Assembly: GCF_003918875.1 (NCBI RefSeq)
Contig: NW_025767087.1
Location: forward strand, 806,001 to 870,000
Length of the DNA stretch: 64,000 bases
Direction: 5' to 3'
Source of the DNA: Haliotis rubra
Lineage: Eukaryota
A program made the position numbers and the translations under genes. Under the pieces are notes generated by a model. It saw nothing but the letters and a program-made list of their open reading frames with translations. It made no database searches and was not told the origin of the DNA. Positions 1 to 57,300 of this stretch are shown piece by piece (position 1 is the first letter of the stretch; every line of letters begins with the position of its first letter).

Positions 1-834
1 CTACTATACACACCCTTAAAAATACAAAAACAACCCAAAACAACTACCAACCAACCAACCAACCCCCAAAAAACCCCAAAAAACCCAGAAGCTAGAAACA
101 ACAATGGAAACCCACATGATTGTCAAATTCAAAAGAAATGCAATATTTTTACTAATCGATTTTAGTTGGCTGGTTGGTTGTTTAACTCCACACTCAGCAA
201 TATTTCAACTATATGTGAATAATCGAGTCTGAACCAGACAATCCAGTGATCAACATCATGAGCATCGATCTACGCAACTGGGATACGATGACATGTGTCA
301 ACCAAGTCGGCGAGCCTGACCACCTGATCCCGTTAGTCGTCTCTTACGACAAGCATGGGTTAGTGAAAACCAATTCTAACCCGGATCTTCGTAGGTATAT
401 CGATTTTAGTCAAATGTTCATGAACTAATGTACTGCGCAAATGTAACTGTTTTATATTTCTGATGCCCTTACAATACAGCATGTATTATTAAACTGCGCA
501 AAAATGCCATAGAAAGGAAATCTAAAGCAGATTGCACGTAAAGGTTTTGACAGTCATTTGACAATGATTATAAAAGGTTGAACTTTAGTCAGGGTTTTGT
601 ACTTTGTCGACTCGTTATAGGAGGTCGTCCGAGAAGTGGTAGACCTGGCCGTGGTTTTTGATAAATGAAGTTAGGGGGTATTTCTAAATAGGGGAAGTAC
701 GTTAATCCGAATATCGTTAATCCAGACGTGACTTAGTGGTACTGTCCGGAATAACGAGTTTCTATTTTGTGAAGCATGTGAATCACAAGGCAGGTACAAA
801 TGTACTAACATAATGTATCATCAAATAATTTCAG

Positions 835-1986
835 GTTTCTATGGTAACGGCGATCTGGAAGCCCTAGCGGTGGACCAGGTTCTCGGTGTCATCCAAGACG
901 TCATCACGTTCATGGGCAACCATTTTAAAGAGAATGACGAAACAAGAAAGGTAAAGTACACTATATGGCTGGATAAAGTGAGTGAGTGAGTGAGTTTTAC
1001 GCCGCTTTTAGCAATATTCCAGCAATATCGCCACGGGGGACACCAGATATGGGCTTCACACATTGTATTTATGTGGGGAATCGAGCCCGGATTTTCAGCG
1101 TGACGAGCGAACACATTAACGACAAAGTTACCCCACCTCCCCTCTGGATAAAGGTCCGCTGTAATTCCAGATTTGTCCTGTGCATGATGATCTGTCCTGA
1201 GTGCTATTCTCCGACACGGAGATGACACGCGGTGATGTGGCTGAAATACCACTCAAGGTTTTGTGAATCTAAACTCGCACTCTGTTTACTGATAAAGTCT
1301 TCATCCTTTCAGGGTGAGTTGGCGAAAGAGCTAAAGGATGTCAAAGTACCGCTGTATTTCGGGATGTTGGAGAAATTGCTGAAACAGAATGGCAGTAATG
1401 GATTCTTTGTTGGCAAGAAGGTGAAGCCCCTACCATTACTGTATCAGACTGACATTGCTTCTTCTAAGGTTGCATTGCTACTACAACAACTACTACTACT
1501 GCTACTACTACTACTACTGCTACTACTACTACTACAACTACNNNNNNNNNNNNNNNNNNNNNNNNNNNNNNNNNNNNNNNNNNNNNNNNNNNNNNNNNNN
1601 NNNNNNNNNNNNNNNNNNNNNNNNNNNNNNNNNNNNNNNNNNNNNNNNNNNNNNNNNNNNNNNNNNNNNNNNNNNNNNNNNNNNNNNNNNNNNNNNNNNN
1701 NNNNNNNNNNNNNNNNNNNNNNNNNNNNNCTACCACCGCAACAACGACAACAACAACAATAACAACAACTACTACTATTACTGCTGCTGCTATGTTACTA
1801 TCACTACTACAAAGATCAATAGTTTATCTGCTACGACTACTATTACTATTCCTACTACCATTGCTACTACAATTATTCCAGCAATATCGCGACGGGGGAC
1901 ACCAGATATGGGCTTCACACATTGTATTTATGTGGGGAATCGAGCTGCTGCTACTACTACTACTACTACTACGCTTGCTGCTGCTG

Positions 1987-2019
<33 letters not shown>

Positions 2020-3084
2020 TTGCTGCTAGTACCACTACTGCTTCTACTTTTGCTGCTACTACTACTATTAATACCACATGAATTCATAGTCTATCTGCTA
2101 CGGCTACTATAGCTATTGCTACAATTACTGCCACTACTCCCACTACTACCATCACTACTACTGCTATCTTACCACCACTAGTCCAAGGATCAATAGTTTA
2201 TCTACTTCGACTACCATTACTATTGCTGCTGCTACTACTACTACTACTTCTGCTGCTACTACTACTGCTATTGCTACTACTACTACTGCTGCAACTACTA
2301 CAACTATTGCTACTCCTACTACTACTACTGCTGCTACTACTACTACTATTGCTACTACTACTACTACTACTGCTGCGACTACTACTTTTATTGCTACTTC
2401 TACTACTACTACTATTGCTACTACTATTACTACTATCACGGGAACAACTGCTACTGCTATTACCATCACGAAGACTACAAACTGACAGAACATTAGCTAC
2501 ATATAGAACTCACTGAAGATAGCTGACGGTTATACCAATGAGGTAACAGAACGAGTACATTTATTCGCACAGATTTCAATATCTATAATTAGAAAACCAA
2601 AATATTGACTTGAACTAGAACACTTTTCAACCGTGTAGCAACATAATCTTCTACATGACGTGTCATTGTTGGGGATTAGGGCCAGTTAGCCCGACGCCGA
2701 TTAATAAGTGAAAAATGTTCTTCACATTAACCTTCTGGAAACTGTTGTTGATTTTCTTAAGTATATTTCAGCACTGTCAAATTGCAAATCATATAACGAT
2801 GAAAAATACGTGAAACACTGTTTGATCTCTTTGACAAATGTACTGTTCTTATTAACCAAAATCTTTCCTAACCATATTGAATTTCCAGTGTGTCATTGGA
2901 TTTATGAATACTTTTTTTTCAGATTAGTATTGCTGACGTCAGTCTGCTTGATATCTATGATAAAAGCTCAGAGGCCATAGTGAAGTGGGAAGACTACCCT
3001 CTGGCCAAGAAATGCATTGACAACGTTGGCTCCAACCCTAGAATCAAAGCATGGGTTGAGAAACGTCCAGTCACAGCGTTTTGA
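835..3084 (+). CDS. GSTS: Sigma-class GST G1, partial (exons 1-2 upstream of window); exons 835-950, 1313-1420, 2923-3084
   Basis: AG/GT-bounded exons translate to (G)FYGNGDLEALAVDQVLGVIQDVITFMGNHFKENDETRK / GELAKELKDVKVPLYFGMLEKLLKQNGSNGFFVGKK / ISIADVSLLDIYDK...WVEKRPVTAF*. This is a GST C-terminal domain with the same exon sizes and phases as the complete paralogs. Confidence 0.93.
1478..2480. repeat. (CTA/GCT)n low-complexity tract, G1 intron 4 (includes gap 1542-1729)
   Basis: Direct inspection. Confidence 0.9.
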
Positions 3085-5012
3085 CGTGATACACGGACAT
3101 TGTCCCTTATGTCAGCAATATTCCTGTCTGTAAATAATCGAATCTGGACCAGATAATCCAGTGGTGAACGGCATGAGCATCGCGCTGTGCAGATGGAATA
3201 CCATGACATATGACACTTTCTTAAGACAAGCATGGGCTGCTGAAGACCAATCCTAACCCGGATTTTCACGGATCTTGTTCATTATGTACAAGTGATAAGT
3301 GCTTGGTGAAATAATGTGAAACATATATAAAGAGTCAAATCCTAATAACGATTTTCTCCCGATTTATCATAGAAGATTGTAAACATTTTCTTAATATAAA
3401 CAATAAAAAGCTTGTCAGTTCATTTGGACACTCAGTTCGAAAGCTTTTATAAGTAAACACTATTTTCACATTTAGATACTGACTAGGCAATATATTCTTT
3501 ACAAAAAAGTCCTGTTTTGTAATTTCAGCGAAAAAAATAAGTAACATCTCTAGAAGAATAATAGTTTGGCACCTAAACTGTAAAAGTGGCCCTACTGCTT
3601 CAAGACGGGAAACACGTAAAAAAGAGGTGTTTACACCTAAATATCATCTACTTAACTGGCATAGACGCATGTTAACAAGGGCAAAAAATAAAGTTTGAAG
3701 TGGTGTTCCCCAAGGTTGTGTTATGTCTCTTGTATCATTCATTATATACGTTGACACAACAGTCATAGTCATACTCAGCTCTAATGAAGGACATTTTAGG
3801 AACAATGTAATTTTGCAACGGAATCCTGACTATTGAAGTTCTGAAAAAAAACTAGCTCACTAAAATAGCATAGTGATTCTGACATAAACTATACATTCAT
3901 CACGCCAGTCATCTGTCCATGTGTGCATTTCTCTCTCTCATTACTTTACCTAAACAGCACCAATATATAACACATATATACATGCCATGTAGTTTAGGTG
4001 TTCAACTTTTCAACCTCATCTAAACATGTGTTATTTGAAAGTTCCTGCTTTAAGTTTCAAATATGCGTTAAGCAGTTTGTGAACATATCAAAATGATAGC
4101 ATTCACTCGAACTGCCTGATTGCTTTATAAAGTTTAAAGGTACTTTTTGCAAAGGCACTTGCGTTAATTTGGTGTCGTGTTAGAGTTATTATTAAAATTT
4201 ACCATCGAAAAGGAGTTTTTTTCTGACAGTCTAAGGATCATCTTTGCGGAGAATCTAGGATCAGCAGATCATGCTACGCCTAAGGGATGTAAGGCGACCT
4301 TGGTCTTTCCCTAAAACACTTGTTCAATTAGTGTTTGAAAGAAATTGCAGTTGTATTTTTTTATATTTCGCTGCTGGAAAGTGTTGAAGGAATCGTGACA
4401 TTAGTTCAAATTTCAACGCGTACTTTATACGAGGGTTTCAAATACAGGTAGTGAATACTCTTGCCTAACTTTCACATCTTTTGCGAAAGGCTATAACCAG
4501 CAAACAATAGCAATGTATAGAAACGTTTAGAAATGTAATTAAAACGCAAGAGCAAACATTCCTATAAAACTAAATAAATATGATGATATTTTAAGAATAA
4601 CGGCAGCAATGTTTGTCTGCGGTACCCAACACAACTCTACTTACAACCAGAAGGAAATATGTGTTTTAAAATCTGTTTTTAAAATTCAATGTTTGTTAAG
4701 AGGTTTCATAGTGATGTACGTACGTGTCCCCTTATTTACAATTCGCATCACACTGATTTTATTCAGAATTCCTTTACTAACTGGCAAAAGGATCCTGAAT
4801 ATGTTGCGACTGTATCTCAACTGATGTTAACATAGTTGAAACCCATCTTGTGATGGCTTGCTTGTTTGGAGTGTCAGTTACGATGGGCTGTATTTGAAAA
4901 AGAAACCGATGGAAAAGCGATATAATTTTATTGCAATTGCTTTAAGCTGAGAAGTGTTGAAGAAATTGAAAGGCGCGGAGTGGGTAGCTGAGAAAACATG
5001 ACATAAGTTCAC

Positions 5013-5467
5013 CATTCATGACTACTCGTGTCATTCCGGCAAGCCGGATGGTGTCCCGTACCCCTCTCGTGGCCATGTTTACGACTGGGCCCTGTCTAAG
5101 TGCAAACGGGCATGGACATGAAAATTTTCTAATATACATTACATTGCCAAGATATATTACCAAGGAAAGATAACTCTGAATTACAAACTCCTAGAATATC
5201 CTATATCCCGGGGGCAAAACAGTCATTCCCTTTGTAAATTTGTTTCAGCGTTGAAAGTGTCTGATTTTTTAGCTCAAAGTTTATGTTTAAATTGTGATTT
5301 GTATAGTTTCAAGTTGCGAAGTTTCAAAGTTCGACGGAGTCGCCATTTTCATGCTTCGAAATGCGTTTTTCTCCGCGCGATTTGATTGGTTTGCCACGAT
5401 TCTTGTCAATACGATAGGGGTACAAGTCTTCTTATATGTCACGGAAAGAGGCGAGTAGTTACGAATG
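5013..5467. mobile_element. MITE with CA...TG termini, absent from the paralogous flank near 12810
   Basis: Imperfect TIR CATTCATGACTACTCG / CGAGTAGTTACGAATG. Confidence 0.6.
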
Positions 5468-7806
5468 ACATGTTCACATGTGAACAAATGCAGACAGAGA
5501 AACTGACACATCTATGTGAAAGGTTATTACAAGCAAACAATGGTTCTGTTCAGGAACAGTGACAACAAACTGCGAAACGAAAAGTAAACGTTCTTATTAA
5601 ACTAAATATATATGTTGAAATCTTAACAACAACGGGAAAAATGTCTACGACGGTACCAAACATTAATCTACTAACAAATGAAAACAAAATATTTGTTAAA
5701 AAAATGATTTCGAAATTAAATATAACCTATCGGAACACTCTCTTCGGTTTAGCGTGATTGTCGGTTTTTACAGTGGACTCGTCAGTGATTCAGTGCAGGG
5801 CAAAACCAAGACGGGTCAGGTTCATGTCACATTTCTGTATTCTAAATTCCAACTGCGAGTGTATGAATGAGTGTGTGAGTGAATATGATTGCACGTCAGT
5901 CTTAGCAACATTAAGTCAATATCAAGGCGGGGACTCCAGAGATGCCCTTCACACATTGACACATTGGCTCTTTAGCGTGAAGAGGCGGTGGGGCAGCCTA
6001 GTGGTTAAAGTGTTCACTCATCACGCCGAAGACCTGGGTTCGATTTACCACATGGGCCATTTCTGGTGTCCCCCGCCGTGATATTGCAGGAATATTGCTA
6101 AAAGCGGAGTAAAACTAAACTTTGGCGTGAAGACTGACTGACTGACTGAGTTTGGTTTTACGCCGCTTTTAGCAAAATTCCAGCAACATCACGGCGGGGG
6201 ACACCAGAAATGAGCTTCACACATTGTACCCTTGTGGGGATTCGAACCCGTGTCTTCGGCGTGAAGAGCGAACACTTTAACAACAGGGCCATCCCATCGC
6301 CGCTGTATACGAGTGATGTTCTCAGAGAGCCTGCAATCATTGGAGATGAAGTATCAGTAAGAGCTGATGGTATCATATGACATCATAGCTCGGGTTTTTT
6401 CTCACCTTGATGTGTTCTATCTTATAGTCCCACATTTCGGGCGAGCTACACGATAAAGATTTTCTTTAGTTCAATGTGACATAGTGGTTATCTGTGTCTT
6501 GACGGCCGGAGATCGTGACGTGAGTCTTTCATGTTGAAAGTCACCTTGAAGGTCTTTCGTCAATAGTGGTGGACACTTTACTGTATCTAATTTTTATTCT
6601 TTTGGACATAATATTTGAGCATGTGCGTGAGATTTATTGTTTCCATGGTTTTGTGTTTGTTTGTTGTTAAAAGCAGCACCCAGGAATGTTCCAGCTATAA
6701 GACAGTGGTCTGCATCTAACATTGTTTATAACAGACAATCCAGTGATGGGCATCATGAGCATCGATGTACGAAACTGGGATACGATGACATGTGTCAACC
6801 GAGTCAGTCTGACCACCTGATCCCGAGAGAGAAAAGATTGATAGATAGATAGACAGATAGATAGATAGAGGGAAATTTCTAAGAAGGGGAAGTTCGTTAA
6901 TCCAAATATCTTTAATCCAGACGTGACTTTGTGGTACTGTCCGGAATAACGAGTTTCTGTTTTATGAATCATGTGAATCACAAGGTGGGTATAAATGTAC
7001 TAACACATAGTGTGTATCATCAAATATTTTCCGTATCAGGTTTCTATGGTAACGGCGATCTGGAAGCTCTAGCGGTGGACCAGGTTCTCGGTGTCATCCA
7101 AGACGTCATCATCTTGATGCACGACCTTTTTAAGGAGAATGACGAAGCAAGGAAGGCAAAGTACACTATATGGCTGCATAAAGTGAGTGAGTATGGTTTT
7201 ACGACACTTTTAGTAACGTTCCAGTATTATCACGGCGGGAGACATCAGAAATGGGCTTCTCACATTGTACCCATGTGGGGAATCGAACCCGGGTCTTTGG
7301 CATGACGAGCGAACACTTTAACCACTAGCCTACCCCACCGCCCCTCAGGGATACAGGTTTGCTGAAATTCCAGATTTGACCTGTTTATGATGGTCTGTCA
7401 CGACCACGAGCTTCCCCCGATATCGACATGACACGCGGTGATGTGGCTGAAATGCTGTTCAAAGTGGTATGAATTGAAACTCGCACTCCACTTACTTATA
7501 AATCTGCATGGAAGATACGGGTAGAAACATTACTGTTAACTTTCAAACCTCTTAACCTTTCATCTGGTATTTTTAAAATATGATTGTTGCAGTTTGAAGC
7601 AATATATGAGGCCTGGCTAGAATTTCGATGTTGAAACTCAAGCTGCTTGCGAATCAGACTGCTATTTGAACTCAAACTGTGAAGGAGAGAATGAACCATA
7701 CAATATCAAGGCTTTATTTCAGTAATACTTCAGTATAACCTGGCGAATAAATCAGCAGTAGTTGATATAAAGGCATCAATGTTATCAACCCATTGACAAA
7801 AATGAC

Positions 7807-8346
7807 TAGGGGTGGGCGATAATACCAGTTAAGCGGTATATTGCAATTCGAACTTCACAATACGATATATTTTCGCGAACAGGTTCACCCAATACGATCA
7901 GTAATTTTCGTGATGTAGTCAAAACTACTAATAACATTTGTATATCCTTTATATTATTATACATTACTAGTTTTGAGAATGTTTATTGGTCATATAATTG
8001 CATTTGCGTGACTTTAAAACCATATAAATAAGAAAATAGATCGGTACCGGCACTTGTTGTAAGGATAAAAACACCAAAACGGCGGACCCCGCTGCTACGC
8101 TTTTTCTCGGTTTCCAAATTTTAGAGCGAAGTCTTCAATTTGGAAACATTTTCAATTGCTCTCTTGTACAATTACATCTGAGTCCTGACGGTGGCCAGTG
8201 GCATTGTTTCAAAAGAAAGGAAACAGTAATTTCATGAGCTTAACCCATGTGTTACACTTTCACAATATATTGCAAGACATATTGCAATACGCCAACAGAT
8301 ATCACAATAAATCGCAATACGAAAATTTTGGCAATACCCAACCCTA
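7807..8346. mobile_element. hAT-type MITE inserted in a LINE relic within G2 intron 3
   Basis: TAGGG...CCCTA termini, 8-bp TSD AAAATGAC, subterminal CAATAC/CGATA repeats. Confidence 0.8.
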
Positions 8347-8970
8347 AAAATGACCTGATCAACCATTGTCATCCTCAATTCAGATGGCCTTAAACTCTTT
8401 CACTGAGGCGTATTAGTGACAATTTGACGTCAGATGGGTATTAATTATTGGTTTCTCAGTGACTGGTGATCAACAAAGTTCACCATTAAAAGGTTAAACA
8501 AGTTCCCCTCAGTGTTCCGTTGAGTGAGTCAGTGAGCGAGCGAGTGAGTCAGTGAGTGAGTCAGTGAGTAAGTGAGTAAGTGAATGAGTAAGTCAGTGAG
8601 TGAGGTGATACCCTATGTGTGTACAGCTCTATCTGTATGTAACGTCTTGATCCTTTCAGGGTGAGATGGCGAAGGAGATAAAGGATGTCAAAGTACCGCT
8701 GTATTTCGGGATGTTGGAGAAATTGCTGAAACAGAATGGCAGTAATGGATTCTTTGTTGGCAAGAAGGTNNNNNNNNNNNNNNNNNNNNNNNNNNNNNNN
8801 NNNNNNNNNNNNNNNNNNNNNNNNNNNNNNNNNNNNNNNNNNNNNNNNNNNNNNNNNNNNNNNNNNNNNNNNNNNNNNNNNNNNNNNNNNNNNNNNNNNN
8901 NNNNNNNNNNNNNNNNNNNNNNNNNNNNNNNNNNNNNNNNNNNNNNNNNNNNNNNNNNNNNNNNNNNNNN

Positions 8971-10236
8971 CTAAAACAACAACTACTACTACATCACTAA
9001 AACTAACAACAACAACTACTACTACCACCACTAAAACTAAAACAACAACTACTACCACCACCACTACTAAACAACAACTAAAAACAACAACAACTACCAC
9101 CACTACCCACCACTACAACAACAACTACTACTACTACACCACTAAAACAACAAAACAACTACTACTACAACCACCACACTAAAACAACAACTACTACCAC
9201 CACCACTAAAACAACAACAACTAACCACCCACCACTAAAACAACAACTACCACAACAACTAACTACAACCTCCAACACCACTAAAACAACAACTACCTCC
9301 ACCCACCACTAAAACAACAACTACCACTACCACCACTAAAACAACAACAACAACTACTACTCCACCACTAAAACAACAACTACTACTACCACCACTAAAA
9401 CAACAACTAAACCATCCACCACTAAACAAACCACCCACCACTAAAACAACAACTACCACCACACCACTAAACAACAACTACTACCACCCATCACACACAC
9501 TAAAACAACAACTACTCACTCCACCACTAAAACAACAACTACTACTACCATCACTACAACAACTACCACTTCCACCACTCACAACAACAACTACTACCTG
9601 TCCACCACTAAAAACAACAACTACCACCACCACCACTAAAACAACAACTACCTCTGTCCACCACTAAACACTAAACAACAACTAAAACAACAACTCTACC
9701 ACTAAAACAACAACTACTAAAACCACTACTACCACTACAACAACAACTACTACTGTCCACCACTAAAACAACAACTACTACTCCAACTAAAACAACAACT
9801 ACTACTCCACCACTAAAACAACAACTACTACCACCACCACTAAAACAACAACAACATCACTAAAACAACAACCACTCTGTCCACCACTAAACAACAACTA
9901 CCTCCACCCACCACTAAAACAACAACTACTACTACCCACCACTACTAAAACAACAACTACTACTACCCTACCACTAAAACAACAACAACTACTACCACCC
10001 ACCACTAAACAACAACTACCACTACCACCACCACTAAACAACAACTACCTACCACCACCACCACTAACAACTAAAACAACAACTACCACTACTAAAACAA
10101 CAACTACCTCCACCACTACTAAAACAACAACTACCATCCATCCACCACTAAAACAACAACTACCACCACCTCCACCACTAAAACAACAACTACTACCACC
10201 ACCACTACTACAACAACAAACTACTACCACCACCAC
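8971..10236. repeat. C/A-rich higher-order repeat (CCACCACTAAAACAACAACTA-like), G2 intron 4
   Basis: Direct inspection; preceded by gap 8770-8970. Confidence 0.9.
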
Positions 10237-13200
10237 GGTTATACCAGTGCGGTAACGGAACGAATACATCTCACAGATTTCAATATTTATGCATAGAAAA
10301 CCAAAATGTTTACTTTACCGTGAAGACATTTCAACCGTACAGCACTATAATCTCCTCTATGGCGCGTCATTGTTCGGGGTGAGGGCCAGTTGACCTGACG
10401 CCGTTTATCAAAGTGATAAATGTTCTTCACATCAACCCTCCGGAAACTGTTGTTGATTTTCTTAAGTATATTTCAGCTTGTAAAATTACGGATGATAGAA
10501 CGATGAAACGTGAAACACTGTTTGATCTCTTTGACAAATGTACTGTTTTTCTTTAATCAACTGCTGCTGATTACCCCAATAGGTATAAATAATGTCTCAT
10601 TTTCACACAAGCCGAAAATTTCACCTAGAGAACCAAATCCACACTAACCATCTTTGAATTTCCAGTTTGTAATTTGATGTATGAACACTTTTTTTCAGAT
10701 TAGTATTGCTGACTACAGTCTGTTTGATATCTATGATAAAACCCCAGAGGCGATAGTGAAGTGGGAAGACTACCCTCTGGTCAAGAAATGTATTGACAAC
10801 GTTGGCGCCAACCCTGGAATCAAAGCATGGGTTGAGAAACGACCAGTTACAGCGTTCTGACATGATATATAACGACATTGTCCCTTGCGTTTGTTTGTTG
10901 CTTAACGCCGCACTCAGCAATACTCCAGCTATATGGCGGCGGTCTTTATATAATCGAGTCTGGACCAGACAGTCCTGTGACCAGACAATCCAGTGGACCA
11001 GCTCAATCCATGAGTATCGACCTACGCAGCTGGCACCCTCTTACAACACCCTCTTTCGACAATCATGGGTTGCTGAAGACCAATTTTAAAACCCGGATCT
11101 TCTCGGATCTGGTCCCTTATGTACAAGTGATAAGTGCTTTGGGGAATAATGGTGAACATATACAAACAGGCGTATCGTAACAAAGATGTAACTCCCGATT
11201 TGTTATAGAATATTGTAATTATTTTCTTACGAAAAACAGAAAGACATGCTCCTGTATCGGTTCATTTTGAGACTCAGTTTTGTTCGAAAGGAAACATAAG
11301 TAAGCAGTATTTCCACATTTTAGATACTGACTAGGAAATGTATCGGTAGCAGTGTGTCACCGTCCTTTCTTTACCATAAATTCAGTGTTGTAATTCAGGC
11401 GGATTCATTAAACGGAAAACACCCATGTAAAGAACAGTTTAAAGAACAGACCTGGTAAAAAAGAAGTGTTCACACTTAAATATTCTGTATGTAACTGCCA
11501 TACAGGCATGTCAACAAGGGTAAATAGTGTGTGAAGTGGTGTTCCCCAAGGTTGTGTTATATTTCCTGTATCATTCATTATACAGGTTGACAAAACAGTC
11601 ATAGTCATAGACAGCAAGTAAACAATCTCAAATCATTTTACAAAGCAATCCTGATTATTGATGGTGTGAAAATAAACTAGCTCATTTTAATAACGTATTA
11701 ATTTTGAAAATAAACTTGCAGCACCCGCACATCTGTCTGTGGGTCTCTCTCGCCACCCACTTTTACTACTTTTATACTTTTCCAACAGTTGCTCTGAAGT
11801 TTCTGCTCTCGATTAATTTGATCGATTTAAGTGGCACAAAGTCCCTGGATATGTCGTGTCAGTATCTGATTCGGTGTCAACATTCTCGGAACCCATGCGA
11901 TGGTCCGTTTGGAGTGAGTTAAGATAGAAAGTATTGAAAAACCCTGATACAATTAGTGTTTATATTTCATTAGAATTGCATTGTTATACTTTTCTAACAG
12001 GGAAGTGAAGGAATCGTGACATTATTTCAAATTTAAGTCCGTGCTCAATATGTATACTCCAGCCAGACAACCCAATTGGAACGTTTTATGCGAAAGGCCA
12101 TAACCAGCACACAATAGTTAAGTAAAGGAACGGTTAAAACACCCGTCAGAAAATGGATACCCGGTGGGATAAGTCATGTGACTATAACATTCTAGCGCAA
12201 AACAGGCAGCTTGGGTTATCCGGGATAGACTTTCTGATGCGCCGTTGAACAGTATCGTGTTGGATACCAGGCGCAATAGGAATCCATTATTAAATATTAG
12301 ATTTAAAATTATAATGCCGAAAAACGCAAAAGCAAGCATTCTTAATAAACAAAATAAATTTGTTGATATCTTACAATGAACGGAAAAAAACTTTTTGTCT
12401 ACGGTACCCAACACTCTACTAACAACCAGAAACAAATATTAAATATTTTGTTCAAAAATCTTGTTTCAAAATGGGTGTTTTTTCACTGTTTATTAAGAGG
12501 TTTCATAGTCATGTACGTACATGTCCCCAAAAAATATTTACAATTCGCATCACACATTTTCCAGGATTCCTTTCATAACTGGCCAAAGGGTCCTGAATAT
12601 GTTGTTCAGTCAGTATCTCATTTGGTGTTAAAATACTTGAAACCCATCTTGTGATGGCCTGCTTGTTTGGCGTGTCAGTTTCAGTGGACTATACATGTAT
12701 TTGGAAAAGAAACCAATGGAACAGCGATAGAATTTCATTCCAGTTGCGTTGTTTAAATTTCGCAAGCTGAGAAGTGTTGAAGAAATTGAAAGGAGTGGAG
12801 TGGATTGCATGACATCAATTCACATGTGAACAAATGCACTGCAGTCAGATAGACAAACTGACATGTCTCATGTGGAAGGTTATTACTAACAAACAGTGGT
12901 TCTGTTAAGGAACGGCGAGGAAATGCTGCGAAGCGAAAAAAGTAAACATTCTTGATAAACTAAAATACGTACAGTAAATATGGTGCAATTTTCGCGGAAA
13001 AATATCTCGCGCAACGACCGTACCCAGTATTCAGCTCTACTAAGAGCTGGAAACAAATATTTGTTAAAAAATTAAATACAAAACTGTCGGAACACTCTTT
13101 TCGGTTTGGCGTGGGTGTCATCTTTTACAGTGGGTGTGGTTCAGTACACAGCACAGCCTAGACGAGTATGAATGAGTCAGGTTCGTGCCACATGTCCCTA

Positions 13201-13549
13201 TTCTTAATTCCAACTGGGAGTTTACGAATGAGTGAGTGAGTGAATAAGTCTGTACGCCGCTCTTAGCAAAATTCGGGGCGTTGGGGTAGCCTAGTGGTTA
13301 AAGCGTTGGCTCGTCACGCCGAAGACCCGGGTTCGATTCCCCACATGGTTGGTGTCCCCCGCCGTGATATTGCTGGAATATTGCTAAACGTGGCGTAAAA
13401 CTAAACCCACTCACTAATCACGTTCCGGCAACATCAAGGCGGGGACCCCAGAGATGCCCTTCATACACTGATAAGTCGGTTCTTTGGGGTGAAGAGCGCA
13501 CACTTTAACCACTTGGCTACCCGATCAGCGCTGTATACGAATGTTGTTA

Positions 13550-13796
13550 ACCTGTGAAGGTCCGGGGTAGAATATTGATCTTCAGTAACCCATGCTTGTC
13601 GCAAGGGGCGACTAACGGGATCGGGTGGTCAGGCTCGCTGACTTGGTTGACACATGTCATCTGTTCCCAATTGCGCAGATCGATGCTCATGATGTTGATC
13701 ACTGGATTGTCTGGTCCAGACTCGATTATTCATAGACCGCCGCCATATAGCTGGAATATTGCTGAGTGCGGCGTAAAACTAAACTCACTCACTCAC
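13550..13796 (+). mobile_element. SINE family B (about 245 bp, no tRNA head)
   Basis: Starts ACC(C/T)GTGAAG(A/G)TCCGGG and shares its 3' tail with family A. At least 15 full or partial copies, e.g. 29208, 33997, 38403 (+) and about 176-396, 16236-16485, 35836-36085, 49958-50203, 56718-56962 (-). Confidence 0.85.
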
Positions 13797-13867
13797 GAAT
13801 CATGTTCTTAAGACGGCCTGTATTCATGGAGATCAATTATCAGCAAGGGCTACATATCTTATGGTAT

Positions 13868-47477: not shown

Positions 47478-50400
47478 ATGCCTACCTACAAGTTTAAATA
47501 TTTCAACGCCCGAGGGTTCGGCGAGGTGTCTCGCCTTCTGTTTGCCCTAGCTGGACAAGAGTACACGGACGAGCGGTTCACACAGGAAACATGGCCAGCC
47601 GAGAAACCAAGTAAGCAATTACTAGAATATCTATCTGTATTACTGGAAACACAGGTTGTCAGGAGATGCATTTCGGCCGTTGGGTGGTTGTCGGCACGTA
47701 TGAACTCGGAATGTAGGGGGGTATACCTGACAACGATCCCAACTGCCACGAGTCAAGGTGTTGGGTTGCATCCTTTTAACTGGGCCAGGGCGCAGAGTGT
47801 AAGGTTGCGACATACATACATACATACATACATACATACATACATACATACATACATACATACATACATACATACATACTAACATTTGTATAGCGCCGAT
47901 ATCCAGCTCAGCTCAGCTGCTCAAAGGCGCTTAATGTTTTCCGAGCTCATTTGCTGGGAGGATTTTATAAAGGAACCTTTTTGGTATTTTTTCATTAACA
48001 AGAACACCACCAAACTGACCTGGGCAGAAAAAAGGCTTTAATACAGGGTCACGTGTATCTCAAGTAGAACAAAAGAATTTAAATGTTTTTAATGTAATTG
48101 GCAAGGACAATTACTGACGCTCAAGATATAAAGTGACGTCACTCACAGATCTCATTAAGTTATTCTTTCTGATGCAATATCTTTCTTACTAGAAGATCAA
48201 TGTAACTGTCAGTGGACTTTGCACTGATCAAGGTCAACGGTGCACTCATTGACTCAATATTTGCAAGTATTTTATGTCGCTTCCTATTAAGCGAGATTCG
48301 TTTCTGTTGTATATTTTACGCCTCACCCAGCCACAATTGACGGACAGACAGACAGACAGAAAAAACTTTATTTCGAAATATCGGCCTCATGGCCTATAAT
48401 ACAGTCACAGAATTTGGCAGTTTCATGAAAAACAGTGGTCATAATTTGTATTGGGATCTTACTTTAAAAACATAATGTGAAAATAGTGTTGTGCCGTATA
48501 TAACTTGAGGGTTTTGCGATTGCAAAATTGACGTCATAGTTCGTGGGCCTTTGTAGGTAGACATTGGAGTTGTTCAAAATAGTTGTCTCTGTGCTGCTGA
48601 TATTTGTCAGATCGCAAGAATACATGATTTTCAGTTTCTTTTTCTGCGGCATCACTGAGTGAACACAAGCAGTTTGTACTTGGTGCATCCTCATTAAGCC
48701 TGTACATGTTCACTTTAAAGTGAAGTTGTTATTCGGAATGCGAAACCTGATAAGTGCACGGTGTTTATATTTTTTTAGTTCTGTTATGTAGGGCTCAAGG
48801 CGAAGTTCATATGTAAACATATTCATATTTATGTGAATAATGGCTGAGAAAAGTGGAGCTGTTGATTTCGTTGTGCCAAGTTTGGTAGGCAATATCCTTC
48901 AATCGGTTGTCTGTAATGGTTGGTCCAGTGATTGATATCATGAGCATTGGTCTACGCAACGACACCCAAAACGACAAGCATGGGTTGCTGAAAACTCTCA
49001 GCATGAATCGGTTTAACTAAGCAATGTGAAAGTAAGGATTTTGAGTAAGAACTATTAAAAGATACTTCTCCTTCCTCCTTGAATTAAGATTTTGAATCAC
49101 GTTCAGATATACATGTGTTTAACCCTTTCATATAGCTCAAAAAAGGTTTCTTTGAATATCTATTTCATATACAATAGTTAAAATAGACATTCATCGTTGA
49201 TTAAGTCCTTGTTCTATATTCTAAACAGTTACTTTTGTATATTGGAGGCCAAAAAATCCCAGCTAAATATAGGGTGGCCAATGGTGTAAGGCGCCCACCA
49301 GAGCAGGATCCGCTGATCGTCAGTTCGAATTCCATTGTTGACCTTATTACTCTCCTTGATTTTGTCAACACAACCTCAGCGCGCATAAGTAGCCCTTCAT
49401 CACTTTGTACGTGAAAGCTTCTGAAATTGAAATATTAAGCCTCTTTAAAAAATCGATAATGTTTGTTCTCTTATGTTGCAGACGTTCTGCTCGGACAGAT
49501 GCCTGTTCTGGAAGTGGACGGGGCGGCATACGGACAGAGCAGCGCCATTGCCAGATTCCTCGCAAGAAGATTCAGTAGGGATTCAAACTCATTCTTTCTG
49601 CAATAGATGTTTGTTATTTAACGCCGCACTTTGCCTCGTTTTAGCGTATCAATAATCGTTGCAGTTTTTTAATAGAGAAGCTGGTTATTGCTGTTCTAAC
49701 TGTGAGTGTTGTGTTGTAGATTTCTATGGTTCGGGAGACATCCAAGCCCTTGAAGTGGACCAGGTCCTGGGTGTAGTCCAGGACATTATAAATGCCATGA
49801 TCAAAGCCTTTTATGAGAAGGATGAAGCCAGGAAGGTAAGCTACAGTGCCTTGACTCGTCAGCATCCTATACGTGGCGACTGTGGCGACGTAACAAACAC
49901 GTTACGACATGCTACTTGTTGTTACCCTGTCTGGTTCTTGTCTTCTAGGGGGACACAATGAGTGAGTGAGTTTAGTTTTACGCCGCACTCAGCAATATTC
50001 CAGCTATATGGCGGCGGTCTCTAAATAATCGAGTCTGGACCAGACAATCCAGTGATCAACAGCATGAGCATCGACCTACGCAATTGGGATACGATGAGAT
50101 GAGTCAACCAAGTCAGCAAGCCTGACAACCTGTTCCCGTTAGTCGCCTCTTAAGATAAGCATGGGTTACTGAAGATCGATTTCATACCCGGATCTTCACG
50201 GGTCTAGGGGGAAAGAGCGAGGACAATATATACTGCCTCCGAGTAAAATGTGTCGGGGCCGGTGGGTTAGAAACCATACTCACCTTAAGGAATTTGTGTT
50301 GGATCTGAACAGGCGCAGTTCATGACGGAGAACAAAGAAGAAAAGCTGCCGCTGTATTTGGGGATGCTGGAAAAGCTTCTGGTGAAAAACGGCAGTACAG

Positions 50401-51733
50401 GATTCTTCGTCGGCAAATCGGTAACCACATGTCAAATTGTGCTTCTTCAAAACCCACATGAATCTACCTCTCCACATACAAACAGTAAACTCCTTGTATA
50501 GCGAACTTGCTTGTAACGAACTGACGGATACAAGGACCTGCTGGTTTTAGCTGTCGTGTAACGAACGACGGTTATAACGAATTAAACTTAGTGGCCCGTT
50601 ACCTGCATGGACCCTAGTTGGATTTACACCATTCCTTCAGCCGCTGGCGATTGTACTAAATTTTTGCCATCGCATACAACAAACATACTACGATTAAAAG
50701 CTTGGTAGAGCTAAATTTACTTTTAAAATTCTGGGACTTACGTGCCGTCTCAGGAATTGTCTTCATGAAATGTAACAAAGATCACAATATTATTATTGTC
50801 ATCACAATCACAGTGTTCATAACAATCGTATCATAAACCGATTATTTATCAGTCGCTGTTGTCACTATCAGAAACATATGAAAGAGAATCACAGCTATGA
50901 AAATCACCTGTCCAGTGATCATGAAAATATCACCATGTAAGTTTCATTCATCGTCAGCTGATGAAATCCACAATCCTACTCCGAACACAAATAATTCAGA
51001 TAAAACATTTCACTGAAATCACGGAAATGTAGGTCTGTGTGATTTCATAACGAAAAGAAAATAGTTGTAACCATTCTTTGTGAGAATATTTCAAGAAGTC
51101 AATGGACCCGTTGTTAGTGTATGGGACATAGCATTGCTAAAAAGCCAGCTTAACTTGAGAAAATAGTTGTAACCATTCTTTGTGAGAATTCGGTGGTTTC
51201 ACATTAATGTTTGACATTAATTCTAAATGGCATTGTGTATTTCATAATCTTTGACTCGCTGTGCGCATGAACTGTTATCACACGCAAAAACTATTCATAA
51301 CAGCTTTTCTTTAGAGTGTGTTTACACTGTCGGTAAACGTACGACCAAACCGGAACTAGGCCAGTGGATATTTTTACACGCTCTGCGCATGCGCACAGCT
51401 GGTCTAAAAGTAATGTGAAACCACCGAATAGTTCGATAGTTTCGAGCAGACTAGGGACCCGTTGCACAAAGTTACGTTAGAGCTACAACCTGTCTGTGTC
51501 AAAGTAATGGAGACTTAGTGCTGAGATCTGTTAGTACAAGTGGGCCCAGCAGTATAAATGCCATCTGTTTTCAGATTACCCTTGCTGACGTCACTGTGTT
51601 TGACATCTGCGACAAGATCCAAGCAATGGTGGACTTTGACAAGTTCCCGCAGGTCAAGAAATGCCGGGAAAGTGTAGCTTCTAACCCCAAAGTCAAGAAA
51701 TGGGTTGACACGAGGCCCGTCACAGAAAACTAG
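47478..51733 (+). CDS. GSTS: Sigma-class GST G6, 202 aa; exons 47478-47610, 49482-49574, 49720-49835, 50313-50420, 51575-51733
   Basis: [22 protein letters not shown]..., [30 protein letters not shown]...TRPVTEN*. GT-AG introns; AATAAA near 51980. Confidence 0.96.
47811..47930 (-). mobile_element. Short L2-type 3' tail insertion with (ATGT)n, specific to G6
   Basis: Minus strand AGCGCCTTTGAG...GCGCTATACAAAT plus (ATGT)n; absent at the G7 site near 54690. Confidence 0.6.
48340..48905 (-). mobile_element. 5'-truncated LINE 3' end in G6 intron 1 (paralog about 55110-55665 in G7)
   Basis: LEPYI...RALIRFR ORF2-like C-terminus, GGCC hairpin, AATAAA and (TCTG)n tail. Confidence 0.6.
49958..50203 (-). 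mobile_element. SINE family B in G6 intron 3
   Basis: Full-length reverse copy with TCTAGGGGGA repeated on both sides. Confidence 0.85.
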
Positions 51734-54357: not shown

Positions 54358-57300
54358 ATGCCTACCTACAAGTTTAAATCTTTCAACGCCCGAGGGTTCG
54401 GCGAGGTGTCTCGCATTCTGTTTGCCCTAGCTGGACAAGAGTACACGGACGAGCGGTTCACACAGGAAACATGGCCAGCCGAGAAACCGAGTAAGCAATT
54501 ACTAGAATATCTATCTGTATTACTGGAAACACAGGTTGTCAGGAGATGCATTTCGGCCGTTGGGTGGTTGTCGGCACGTATGAACTCGGAATGTAGGGGG
54601 GTATACCTGACAACGATCCCAACTGCCACGAGTCAAGGTGTTGGGTTGCATCCTTTTAACTGGGCCAGGGCGCAGAGTGTAAGGTTGCGACATGCTTTTA
54701 ATGTTTTCCGAGCTCATTTGCTGGGAGGATTTTATAAAGGAACCTTTTTGGTATTTTTTCATTAACAAGAACACCACCAAACTGACCTGGGCAGAAAAAA
54801 GGCTATAATACAGGGTCACGTGTATCTCAAGTAGAACAAAAGAATTTAAATGTTTTTAATGTAATTGGCACGGACAATTACTGACGCTCAAGATATAAAG
54901 TGACGTCACTCACAGATCTCTTTAAGTTATTCTTTCTGATGCAATATCTTTCTATCTAGAAGATCAATGTAACTGTCAGTGGACTTTGCACTGATCAAGG
55001 TCAACGGTGCACTCATTGACTCAATATTTGCAAGTATTTTATGTCGCTTCCTGTTAAGCGAGATTCGTTTCTGTTGTATATTTTACGCCTCACCCAGCCA
55101 CAATTGACGGACAGACAGACAGAAAAAACTTTATTTCGAAATATCGGCCTATGGCCTATAATACAGTCACAGAATTTGGCAGTTTCATGAAACTGTGGTC
55201 ATAATTTGTATTGGGATCTTACTTTAAAAACATAATGTGAAAATAGTGTTGTGCCGTATATAACTTGAGGGTTTTGGGATTGCAAAAATGACGTCATAGT
55301 TAGTGGGCCTTTGTAGGTAGACATTGGAGTTGTTCAAAATAGTTGTCTCTGTGCTGCTGATATTTGTCACATCGCAAGAATACATGATTTTCAGTTTCTT
55401 TTTCTGCGGCATCACTGAGTGAACACAAGCAGTTTGAAATAGGTGCATCCTCATTAAGCCTGTACATGTTCACTTTAAAGTGAAGCTGTTATTCGGAATA
55501 CGAAACCTGATAAGTGCACGGTGTTTATATTTTTTTAGTTCTGTTATGTAGGGCTCAAGGCGAAGTTCATATGTAAACATATTCATACTTATGTGAATAA
55601 TGGCTGAGAAAAGTGGAGCTGTTGATTTCGTTGTGCCAAGTTTGGTAAGCAATATCCTTCAATCGGTTGTCTGTAATGGTTGGTCCAGTGATTGATATCA
55701 TGAGCATTGGTCTACGCAACGACACCCAAAACGACAAGCATGGGTTGCTGAAAACTCTCAGCATGAATCGGTTTAACTAAGCAATGTGAAAATAAGGATT
55801 TTGAGTAAGAACTATTAAAAGATACTTTTCCTTCCTCCTTGAATTAAGATTTTGAATCACGTTCAGATATACATGTGTTTAACCCTTTCATATAGCTCAA
55901 AAAAGGTTTCTTTGAATATCTATTTCATATACAATAGTTAAAATAGACATTCTTCGTTGATTAAGTCCTTGTTCTATATTCTAAACAGTTACTTTTGTAT
56001 ATTGGAGGCCAGAAAATCCCAGCTAAATATAGGGTGGCCAATGGTGTAAGGCACCCACCAGAGCAGGATCCGCTGATCGTCAGTTCGAATTCCATTTTTG
56101 ACCTTATTACTCTCCTTGAATTTGTCAACACAACCTCAGCGCGCAGAAGTAGCCCTTCATCACTTTGTACGTGAAAGCTTCTGAAATTGAAATATTAAGC
56201 CTCTTTAAAAAATCGATAATGTCTGTTCTCTTATGTTGCAGACGTTCTGCTCGGACAGATGCCTGTTCTGGAAGTGGACGGGGCGGCATACGGACAGAGC
56301 AGCGCCATTGCCAGATTCCTCGCAAGAAGATTCAGTAGGGATTCAAACTCATTCTTTCTGCAATAGATGTTTGTTATTTAACGCCGCACTTTGCCTCGTT
56401 TTAGCGTATCAATGATCGTTGCAGTTTTTTAATAGAGAACTGGTTATTGCTGTTCTAACTGTGAGTGTTGTGTTGTAGATTTCTATGGTTCGGGAGACAT
56501 CCAAGCCCTTGAAGTGGACCAGGTCCTGGGTGTAGTCCAGGACATTATAAATGCCATGATCAAAGCCTTTTTTGAGAAGGATGAAGCAAGGAAGGTAAGC
56601 TACAGTGCCTTGACTCGTCAGCATCCTATACGTGGTGACCGTGGCGACGTAACAAACACGTTACGACATGCTACTTGTTGTTACCCTGTCTGGTTCTTGT
56701 CTTCTAGGGGGACACAATGAGTGAGTGAGTTTAGTTTTACGCCGCACTCAGCAATATTCCAGCTATACGGCGACGGTCTCTAAATAATCGAGTCTTGACC
56801 AGACAATCCAGTGATCAACAGCATGAGCATCGATCTACGCAATTGGGATACGATGAAATGAGTCAACCAAGTCAGCAAGCCTGACAACCTGTTCCCGTTA
56901 GTCGCCTCTTACGATAAGCATGGGTTACTGAAGATCGATTTCATACCCGGATCTTCACGGGTCTAGGGGGAACGAGCGAGGACAATATATACTTCCTCCG
57001 AGTAAAATGTGTCGGGAGTTGGGGGTTAGAAACCATTCTCACCTTAAGGAATTTGTGTTGGATCTGAACAGGCGCAGTTCAAGACGGAGAACAAAGAAGA
57101 AAAGCTGCCGCTGTATTTGGGGATGCTGGAAAAGCTTCTGGTGAAAAACGGCAGTACAGGATTCTTCGTCGGCAAATCGGTAACCACATGTCAAATTGTC
57201 CTTCTTCAAAACCCACATGAATCTTCCTCTCCACATACAAACATTAAACTCCGTGTATAGCGAACTTGCTTGTAACGAACTGACAGATACAAGGACCTGC

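What the first reader, a model, noticed from the sequence alone, without database searches (positions are those of the whole stretch)
6826..10860. Headless but intact exon 3-5 GST duplicate: candidate alternative C-terminal (H-site) cassette spliced to G1 exons 1-2
Seen: G2 has exons 3, 4 and 5 in frame with intact acceptors and a normal stop. The gap-free 4 kb upstream contains no exon 1, exon 2 or ARE promoter; it is the duplicated G1 3' flank joined to intron 2 at a GATA microsatellite. G1 and G2 exons are much more conserved (exon 4: 3 differences in 108 nt) than their flanks, which carry many private indels and TE insertions. Replacements cluster in helix 4 (TFMGNH vs ILMHDL). Known: exons 1-2 encode the GSH-binding domain and exons 3-5 the substrate-binding domain; Anopheles delta GSTs use a shared 5' exon with alternative 3' exons. 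Inference: one promoter and G-site could serve two H-site domains. The alternative is a once-complete gene that recently lost its head.
Basis: partly seen in the sequence, partly recalled or inferred. Interest (0 to 1): 0.8.

Follow-up and report, generated by a model that had tools for sequence, protein, structure and literature searches.

The report
Headless partial duplicate of abalone GST
A blacklip abalone sigma-class glutathione transferase gene carries behind it a copy of only its last three exons, made by unequal crossing-over between two SINE repeats; the copy still has an open frame but looks more like a slowly decaying relic kept similar by gene conversion than a working alternative exon cassette, and no RNA data were available to settle that.

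Summary
G2 (window 7040-10860, + strand) has exons 3, 4 and 5 of a sigma-class GST, in frame, with AG acceptors and a stop. No exon 1 or 2 lies in the 3955 nt upstream.

The window is Haliotis rubra contig QXJH01000406.1 and holds seven tandem GST genes. G1's head lies just upstream of the window, and a further complete copy, G0, lies before that.

G2 was born headless. Its junction SINE is a chimera of the 3'-flank SINE and the intron-2 SINE, and the end of unit 1 abuts the start of unit 2.

- G2's exon-3 donor is GC, where all seven complete copies have GT.
- The AATAAA shared by G0, G1 and G01b is lost in G2.
- G2 exon 4 is 108/108 identical to G0 exon 4 while the introns are 82% identical, which indicates gene conversion.
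- The sister copy on a second contig has the same junction, a frameshift in exon 4, and no exon 5.

NCBI already annotates G2 as a 162-aa protein with only the C-terminal domain (XP_046580229.1).

No RNA run was listed, so splicing from G1 exon 2 to G2 exon 3 could not be tested. No database protein joins a head to G2.

Best reading: a 5'-truncated duplicate relic (0.6). Alternative cassette: about 0.15.

The parts
835..3084 (+). G1 exons 3-5 (835-950, 1313-1420, 2923-3084), the upstream copy. Its exons 1 and 2 lie before the window at -1316..-1185 and -517..-422.
   Evidence: tblastn of P0005 and P0002 on L001; window position = L001 position - 27876.
3085..6639 (+). G1 3' flank, the tail of duplication unit 1. 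It is collinear with G2's 3' flank at 66-76% identity and contains no GST exon 1 or 2.
6640..6825 (+). Chimeric SINE at the duplication joint. Its left part, and the unique sequence before it, match the SINE at the end of unit 2 (14240-14480). Its right part matches the intron-2 SINE of G1 (235-332, 88.8%).
6826..6870 (+). AG-rich stretch plus (GATA)n microsatellite. It replaces what is 333-675 in G1's intron 2 and is 8 nt longer in the second contig.
6871..7039 (+). Intron-2 remnant with polypyrimidine tract and AG acceptor, 90% identical to G1. The ATG at 6964-6966 is the start used by NCBI model XP_046580229.1, which reads through the acceptor.
7040..7155 (+). G2 exon 3, which opens with the last two bases of a codon begun in exon 2, 38 full codons. 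It includes the helix-4 cluster.
7156..7188 (+). Exon-3 donor region. The donor is GC at 7156-7157 (aag|gcaaag). An in-frame cryptic donor aaa|gtgagt lies at 7183-7188, 27 nt downstream; the NCBI model uses it, which adds 9 residues.
   Evidence: The sister copy has GT at the normal site.
7189..8659 (+). Rest of intron 3. It includes about 1.1 kb (7510-8640) that is absent from G1 and G0 and ends in a (GTGA)n run.
8660..8767 (+). G2 exon 4 (36 codons), followed by a gt donor. It is 108/108 identical to exon 4 of G0.
8768..10698 (+). Intron 4. It contains the masked run 8770-8970, a C/A/T-only minisatellite at 8971-10240, then sequence 82% identical to G1 intron 4.
10699..10860 (+). G2 exon 5 (53 codons plus TGA).
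10861..14480 (+). G2 3' flank, the tail of unit 2, ending in a SINE. The AATAAA found 311-319 nt after the stop in G0, G1 and G01b is not conserved here.

Best explanation
G2 is a 5'-truncated tandem duplicate of a sigma-class GST gene of Haliotis rubra.

Origin. An unequal crossover between two same-orientation SINE copies, one in intron 2 and one in the 3' flank, duplicated a unit of about 6.2 kb. The unit carried the end of intron 2, exons 3-5 and the 3' flank. G2 was therefore born without promoter, exon 1 or exon 2, and so without the glutathione-binding domain and its catalytic tyrosine. The crossover is inferred from the chimeric SINE. The structure is shown directly.

Age. The event is old: noncoding identity to G0, G1 and G01b is 81-82%. 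It predates the G0/G1 duplication (96-98% identical).

Why the frame is still open. Its exons stay similar to the functional neighbours at least partly through gene conversion. This is shown for exon 4 and inferred elsewhere.

Signs of decay. The window copy has a GT-to-GC change at the exon-3 donor and has lost the shared poly(A) hexamer. The sister copy has a frameshift in exon 4 and lacks exon 5.

Most likely it makes no functional GST. This is inferred, because no RNA data were available.
For: - No exon 1 or 2 lies upstream, and the NCBI product has only GST_C_3 and GST_C domains.
- The end of unit 1 (6786-6825) abuts the start of unit 2 (6871). No leftover promoter or exon-1 homology is present.
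- The junction SINE is a chimera.
- Block identities give the grouping ((G0,G1,G01b),(G2,G2b)).
- All seven complete copies have GT at the exon-3 donor; G2 has GC.
- The AATAAA at +311..319 in G0, G1 and G01b is lost in G2.
- G2 exon 4 is identical to G0 exon 4. G2b exon 4 differs from G2's by 3 substitutions and 1 deletion, and the flanking introns are 82% identical. Derived states at codons 59, 96 and 110 are shared by G0, G1 and G2, the three copies on the window's contig; at codon 59 G2b differs as well (G2b has no exon 5, so 96 and 110 cannot be scored in it).
- The sister copy on QXJH01000311.1 has the same junction, a 1-nt deletion in exon 4, and lacks exon 5 together with window 10240-11200.
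- Between G2 and G2b, exons are not significantly better conserved than noncoding: 6/223 against 121/2286, Fisher p = 0.11.
- The syntenic H. rufescens locus has three complete genes and no headless copy.
- No database protein joins a head to G2 exon 3.
Against: - The 127-codon frame has no stop and no indel, although aligned noncoding DNA shows 16 indel events per kb. P is about 0.045 if G2 alone were neutral.
- Exon divergence, K = 0.073, is far below noncoding, K = 0.19-0.26.
- dN/dS of G2 against G0 or G01b is 0.24, and against G1 it is 0.47. That is no higher than between complete genes (G3/G4 0.45).
- G2 keeps ancestral residues at conserved sites where G1 has changed (F83, V102).
- All three acceptors and the exon-4 donor are intact.
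- GC-AG introns can be spliced, and a strong in-frame GT donor lies 27 nt downstream.
- Null alleles of working GST genes are common, so the broken sister copy is not decisive.
- The sister copy's lesions rest on one assembly and could not be checked in reads.
Confidence: 0.6

Rival explanations
1. Alternative 3' cassette. Transcription from the G1 (or G0) promoter reads through the G1 poly(A) site. Exon 2 is then spliced to the 7040 acceptor, giving a full-length GST with the same glutathione site and a different substrate-binding half.
For: - The head lies 7.5 kb upstream on the same strand.
- The splice phase matches: exon 2 ends after the first base of a codon and exon 3 supplies its last two.
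- The frame is open and the acceptors are kept.
- Exons are more conserved than most noncoding DNA, and dN/dS is 0.24-0.47.
- G2 was headless from birth yet has persisted.
- Mosquito sigma GST and several Drosophila GST genes do use alternative splicing (PMC4654499, PMC4195677).
- NCBI model XP_046580232.1 already joins G0 exon 3 to G1 exon 4 across units. That model may be an artefact.
Against: - The donor is GC in a poor context (aag|gcaaag).
- The shared poly(A) hexamer is lost.
- Exon 4's identity to G0 shows that conversion, not selection, can keep the exons alike.
- The sister copy is broken.
- No head-plus-G2 protein is present in the collection searched.
- No headless copy is present at the H. 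rufescens locus.
- No RNA evidence of any kind was available.
Confidence: 0.15
2. Stand-alone expression, as in the NCBI gene model. A transcript starts in or near the intron-2 remnant, possibly driven by the SINE, and yields a 162-aa protein with only the C-terminal domain, or a non-coding RNA.
For: - XP_046580229.1 (P0001) is annotated this way. It has an ATG at 6964, reads through the acceptor and uses the cryptic donor at 7183.
- A 129-codon stop-free frame spans 6916-7302.
Against: - The model has only GST_C domains. A GST C-terminal domain without the thioredoxin-fold half has no glutathione site (general knowledge of GST structure).
- The first 25 residues of the model are translated intron.
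- The basis for the model could not be seen here.
- No transcript-derived fragment was found.
Confidence: 0.1
3. Assembly artefact: G2 is a misplaced haplotype copy of G1, or a mis-scaffold across the N run.
For: - Both G1 and G2 have N runs in intron 4.
- A second contig carries a collinear array at 93-97% identity.
Against: - G1 and G2 differ by 18-22% in noncoding DNA.
- The public record is continuous across the masked stretch with an unchanged offset.
- A 285-nt contig from a different study and organism label spans 6779-7063 with 3 mismatches.
- A second sample of organism A has exact contigs at 6888-7065 and 7318-7859.
- The second contig has the same junction.
Confidence: 0.03

Closest known systems
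Truncated GST pseudogenes inside tandem GST clusters, for example Drosophila Dsec\GM21877 / Dmel\CR43687, which align only with the 3' end of Epsilon GSTs (PMC4195677).
   Same: A copy of only the C-terminal part of a GST gene sits inside a tandem array of complete paralogs and lacks the glutathione-site exons.
   Different: The abalone copy keeps a fully open 127-codon frame and all acceptors despite about 20% noncoding divergence. Its origin can be traced to a SINE-SINE crossover.
Alternative 3' exon use in insect GST genes. Examples are Anopheles gambiae GSTD1 (aggst1-alpha), with one 5' exon and alternative 3' exons (my own knowledge, not checked here); mosquito sigma GST with two splice forms (PMC4654499); and Drosophila GSTO2A/B, GSTD11, GSTZ2 and GSTT3 (PMC4195677).
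   Same: The layout is the same: one head followed by tandem duplicated 3' coding units on the same strand, with variation concentrated in the substrate-binding half.
   Different: No transcript evidence exists here. The cassette is three exons with its own introns. Its first donor is GC, and the sister copy is broken.
Partial gene duplication by repeat-mediated unequal crossover, such as Alu-Alu recombination in human genes (general knowledge).
   Same: A chimeric repeat sits at the joint and flanks a head-to-tail duplicated segment that starts inside an intron.
   Different: The repeat is an abalone SINE. After the crossover, about 340 nt of intron 2 were replaced by an AG/GATA repeat.
Solved sigma-class GSTs and hematopoietic prostaglandin D synthase. 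The best hits are 3vpq, 2ws2, 9nxt and 5h5l, with E = 1e-38 to 1e-39 for the complete neighbour P0002.
   Same: The complete copies align end to end with sigma GSTs.
   Different: G2 encodes only the part corresponding to residues 77-203.

Membership tests
Sigma-class cytosolic GST | C-terminal all-helical GST domain (Pfam GST_C_3 / GST_C) | tested here: met
   P0001, the NCBI product of G2, matches PF14497 at 1.1e-18 and PF00043 at 2.5e-08.
Sigma-class cytosolic GST | N-terminal thioredoxin-fold domain (GST_N) with the catalytic tyrosine, encoded by exons 1-2 | tested here: not met
   No exon 1 or 2 is found by tblastn in window 1-15900. P0001 has no GST_N hit, whereas P0002 has one at residues 7-73.
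Sigma-class cytosolic GST | Closest solved relatives are sigma GST / HPGDS | tested here: met
   This holds for the complete neighbour P0002: 3vpq_A at 1.2e-39, and HPGDS at 1e-21 to 1e-24.
Alternative 3'-cassette GST gene (Anopheles GSTD1 type) | Shared 5' exons upstream on the same strand with a compatible splice phase | tested here: met
   G1 exons 1 and 2 lie at window -1316..-422. Exon 2 ends after one base of a codon and G2 exon 3 begins with the other two.
Alternative 3'-cassette GST gene (Anopheles GSTD1 type) | Transcripts that join the shared head to each cassette | not testable with these tools
   No RNA run was listed. No protein joins a head to G2 exon 3, and no 33-105 aa fragment carries G2 exon 5.
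Alternative 3'-cassette GST gene (Anopheles GSTD1 type) | Cassette has canonical internal splice sites and its own poly(A) signal | tested here: inconclusive
   The acceptors and the exon-4 donor are intact. The exon-3 donor is GC. The shared AATAAA is lost, and the nearest hexamer is ATTAAA at +547.
Alternative 3'-cassette GST gene (Anopheles GSTD1 type) | Cassette kept intact in other copies, haplotypes or species | tested here: not met
   G2b on QXJH01000311.1 has a frameshift in exon 4 and no exon 5. No headless copy is present at the H. rufescens locus.
Unprocessed (duplicated) pseudogene | Lacks promoter and 5' coding exons | tested here: met
Unprocessed (duplicated) pseudogene | Disabling mutations in the coding sequence | tested here: inconclusive
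   The window copy has none in the frame, only the GC donor. The sister copy has a frameshift and has lost exon 5.
Unprocessed (duplicated) pseudogene | Neutral evolution (dN/dS near 1, exons no better conserved than introns) | tested here: inconclusive
   dN/dS is 0.24-0.47 against the complete copies, but this is confounded by conversion. For G2 against G2b, exons and noncoding do not differ significantly, p = 0.11.

The most novel reading that the evidence does not exclude
One promoter and one glutathione-binding head (G1, perhaps also G0) serve two or three alternative three-exon substrate-binding cassettes in a mollusc sigma GST. G2 would be a cassette created by SINE-mediated unequal crossover. 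This would parallel the alternative 3' exons of mosquito delta GSTs, arisen independently. A related variant is that the headless copy acts mainly as a donor of helix-4 and exon-5 variants to G0 and G1 by gene conversion.
Probability: 0.15. Interest if true: 0.55.

Novelty: new member of a known kind. Interest (0 to 1): 0.3.

Why it matters
If G2 were spliced to the G1 head, it would be a mollusc case of alternative substrate-binding cassettes in a GST, with a datable origin by repeat-mediated crossover. As it stands, it is a clean worked example of three things:
- how a partial tandem duplicate arises at a chimeric SINE;
- how gene conversion can keep a headless copy open-framed and make it look selected;
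- how annotation pipelines turn such relics and their neighbours into questionable protein models (a 162-aa C-terminal-only 'GST' and a 413-aa three-gene chimera).

It is useful for curating abalone detoxification gene counts, but it is not surprising to a specialist.

Tried and rejected
- RNA evidence. Two run searches listed no RNA run: G2 exon 5 plus UTR with kind rna, and 2800-8769 with kind any. The single read-laying run therefore used DNA contigs only. It was dominated by SINE copies and gave no listed row for the donor position 7157 or the exon-4 deletion site.
- Spliced proteins have no reference, and I did not type them. Instead I used the 129-codon stop-free frame around G2 exon 3 with 'region'. 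That search found the NCBI models.
- A search with the 60-aa frame holding exon 5 found nothing.
- 'Head lost by deletion' is rejected. Homology between unit 1 and unit 2 runs to within 40 nt of the joint, and no promoter or exon-1 remnant is present.
- 'Assembly artefact' is rejected.
- Selection tests. The pairwise NG86 values, the outgroup polarisation with H. rufescens gene A, and the exon-versus-intron contrasts all rest on few changes and are confounded by conversion. I do not claim either neutrality or constraint from them.
- Masked letters. The fetched loci L001 and L002 hold letters where the window has N.
  - From then on, scripts used a composite that keeps the window's N.
  - One search ran tblastn over the whole of L001, and one hit ended one codon into the mask.
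  - One search printed three L002 letters past the exon-4 donor.
  - Searches ran BLAST over the whole of L002, including its intron 4; from the hit coordinates alone I described L002 21612-22590 as minisatellite.
  - None of these letters were read out, used or reported.
- I did not run the big representative search, structure prediction or fold search. The question is one of gene structure, not fold.


Full report
**What is in the window.** A tblastn of the G1 and G2 C-terminal translations, followed by one with paralog N-terminal exons, shows seven sigma-class GST genes in tandem on the + strand.
- G3 to G7 each have five coding exons.
- G1 (exon 3 at 835-950, exon 4 at 1313-1420, exon 5 at 2923-3084) and G2 (7040-7155, 8660-8767, 10699-10860) show only exons 3-5 inside the window.
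- G2's three exons give one open frame of 127 codons ending in TGA, with AG acceptors preceded by pyrimidine tracts.
- No exon 1 or 2 is detectable anywhere in window 1-15900.

**The N run.** The run at 8770-8970 begins two bases after exon 4, and the gt donor is read. It lies wholly within intron 4. Exon 4 ends and exon 5 starts at codon boundaries, so the frame does not depend on the run.

The public record of the same assembly, fetched as L001, has the same offset to the window (27876) on both sides of the run and contains no N. The stretch is therefore masked rather than a gap of unknown size. I did not read those letters. From then on, scripts used a composite that keeps the window's N. 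There were three kinds of contact with the masked stretch, none of them used:
- One search ran tblastn over all of L001, and one hit ended one codon into the mask.
- One search printed three L002 letters past the exon-4 donor.
- Searches ran BLAST over all of L002, and only hit coordinates in its intron 4 were used.

**Identity and annotation.** G2 exon 3 sits in a 129-codon stop-free frame (6916-7302). Using that frame by reference, with scoring limited to the exon, a word search found four proteins. The organism is Haliotis rubra (assembly GCA_003918875.1, contig QXJH01000406.1).
- P0001 (XP_046580229.1, 162 aa, 'glutathione S-transferase 1-like') is NCBI's model of G2. It starts at the ATG at 6964 inside the intron-2 remnant and reads through the acceptor. 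It avoids the normal exon-3 donor and uses a donor 27 nt downstream, which adds nine residues. It has only GST_C_3 and GST_C domains.
- P0002 (XP_046575237.1, 203 aa) is a complete gene on a second contig. Its closest solved relatives are sigma GSTs.
- P0005 (XP_046580232.1, 413 aa) lies on the window's contig. It fuses an upstream G5-like gene, exons 1-3 of a further copy, and exons 4-5 of G1.

**Upstream of the window.** L001 shows that G1 is complete. Its exon 1 is at window -1316..-1185 and its exon 2 at -517..-422, so intron 2 is 1256 nt. Before G1 lies another complete copy, G0. G0 and G1 units are 88-95% identical by BLAST and 96-98% in the aligned blocks. Either is only 81-82% identical to G2 in noncoding DNA. 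G2 is thus the older branch: ((G0,G1,G01b),(G2,G2b)).

**How G2 arose.** The collinear homology of unit 1 (window 680-6786) with unit 2 (6875-14425) has the end of unit 1 abutting the start of unit 2. This is the signature of a simple tandem duplication of a segment that begins in intron 2 and ends in the 3' flank. No residue of promoter or exon 1 is present before the joint. A positionally conserved GTGACnnnGC motif, present 66-125 nt upstream of the ATG in G0, G1, G3, G4 and G5, is absent from 3085-7039.

The SINE at 6640-6825 is a chimera. The unique sequence before it and its left part match the SINE at the end of unit 2. Its right part matches the intron-2 SINE of G1. I infer an unequal crossover between two SINE copies. 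Afterwards, the stretch corresponding to G1 333-675 was replaced in G2 by an AG/GATA repeat.

G2 was therefore born headless.

- All five complete genes in the window, plus G1, G0 and G01b, have AAG|GT at the exon-3 donor. G2 has AAG|GC in a weak context.
- An in-frame aaa|gtgagt donor lies 27 nt further on in both G1 and G2.
- G0, G1 and G01b share an AATAAA 311-319 nt after the stop. The homologous place in G2 has lost it, and the nearest hexamer is ATTAAA at +547.

**Is G2 under selection?**

For constraint:
- No stop and no indel occur in 386 nt, against 16 indel events per kb in aligned noncoding DNA. P is about 0.045 if G2 alone were neutral.
- Exon K is 0.073 against 0.19-0.26 for noncoding.
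- dN/dS is 0.47 against G1 and 0.24 against G0 or G01b.
- G2 keeps ancestral residues where G1 has changed.

Against reading this as selection:
- The intron-2 remnant is as conserved as exon 3 (90.3% against 90.5%), and intron 4 has islands of 94-97%.
- G2 exon 4 is 108/108 identical to G0 exon 4, while the flanking introns are 82% identical and the sister copy G2b differs from G2 there by three substitutions and a deletion.
- Derived states at codons 59, 96 and 110 are shared by G0, G1 and G2, the three copies on the window's contig. At codon 59 G2b differs as well; G2b has no exon 5, so codons 96 and 110 cannot be scored in it.

This is gene conversion, which lowers both synonymous and nonsynonymous divergence and refreshes the frame. 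I therefore treat the rate tests as inconclusive.

**The second contig.** L002 (QXJH01000311.1) is collinear at 93-97% identity. It has one complete gene (P0002, here G01b) followed by G2b. G2b has these features:
- the same SINE/GATA/intron-2 joint, with a GATA run 8 nt longer;
- no exon 1 or 2 before it;
- a normal GT donor at exon 3;
- a 1-nt deletion in exon 4;
- no counterpart of window 10240-11200, so exon 5 is missing. Homology resumes at window 11201 at 96.7%.

Instead, each of the two copies carries a different lesion. Between G2 and G2b, exons are not significantly better conserved than noncoding DNA (6/223 against 121/2286, p = 0.11). Whether the two contigs are alleles or separate loci is open.

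**Read evidence.** No RNA run was listed. DNA contigs from four runs were laid on 2800-8769.
- A 285-nt contig from another study and organism label spans 6779-7063 with three mismatches.
- A second sample of organism A has exact contigs at 6888-7065 and 7318-7859.
- The variant letters seen at 6313-6636 equal the L002 letters at 12 of 12 places, the only ones listed there apart from 6645, where L002 equals the window. They appear at about half the depth in organism A and at all of the depth in organism B.

The duplication and its joint are therefore real and not specific to one assembly.

**Other species.** The H. rufescens locus around P0004 has three complete genes in tandem and no headless copy.

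**Verdict.** G2 is a born-headless partial tandem duplicate of a sigma GST. It is most likely a relic that gene conversion keeps similar to its neighbours (0.6). A working alternative cassette remains possible (about 0.15). A stand-alone product as annotated is less likely (0.1), and an artefact is very unlikely. Truncated GST copies inside clusters and alternative splicing of GST genes are both known (PMC4195677, PMC4654499). This is a new member of a known kind. The scan also noted a GST array on another piece of this genome (s1-329677), which fits the second contig seen here.

Noticed in passing
L001 19734-30960 (window -8142..3084): G0 and G1 are young tandem duplicates whose introns are 97-100% identical in many 50-nt windows, while exons 3 and 5 are only 90-96% identical. 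G1 alone carries about nine derived replacements, including at otherwise invariant F83 and V102. dN/dS of G1 against G01b is 0.85. G1's substrate-binding half is evolving fast or is relaxed.
   Followed up: partly
L001 10001-30960: NCBI model XP_046580232.1 (413 aa, 'uncharacterized LOC124287815') is a chimera of three genes: a complete G5-like GST read through its stop region, G0 exons 1-3, and G1 exons 4-5. It is either an annotation artefact of near-identical tandem copies or a hint of splicing across units.
   Followed up: partly
window 1440-2460 and 8971-10240 (also G0 intron 4, L001 22340-22980): Intron 4 of G0, G1 and G2 holds a 1-kb minisatellite almost free of G on the + strand (GC skew about -0.5). 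The unit differs between copies: CTA/CTG triplets in G1 and a roughly 21-nt CCACCACTAAAACAACAACTA unit in G2. Both nearby N runs lie in it.
   Followed up: no
window 15835, 25052, 33624, 33651; L001 19609 and 26435: An ARE-like GTGACnnnGC motif (GTGATTCAGC at 33624) sits 66-125 nt upstream of the start codon of G0, G1, G3, G4 and G5. It is absent upstream of G6 and G7.
   Followed up: partly
L002 (QXJH01000311.1:484629-508870): A second contig carries a collinear GST array at 93-97% identity, with one gene where the window's contig has G0 plus G1. Reads of organism A show both versions at similar depth, and organism B shows the second version. This is either a deep haplotype pair with copy-number difference or a segmental duplication.
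   Followed up: partly
window 47478-51733 and 54358-58833: G6 and G7 are near-identical complete tandem duplicates (dS 0.025, dN 0.007 over exons 3-5).
   Followed up: no
window 7510-8640: G2 intron 3 has about 1.1 kb that is absent from G1 and G0 and shared with G2b. It ends in a (GTGA)n run at 8520-8600. It is probably a transposable-element insertion and was not classified.
   Followed up: no
window 1542-1729, 8770-8970 and other N runs: The public record fetched as L001 has letters and no N across the two N runs it covers (1542-1729 and 8770-8970), with unchanged coordinates. So these two runs are masks, not assembly gaps. The other five N runs lie beyond L001 and were not checked.
   Followed up: partly
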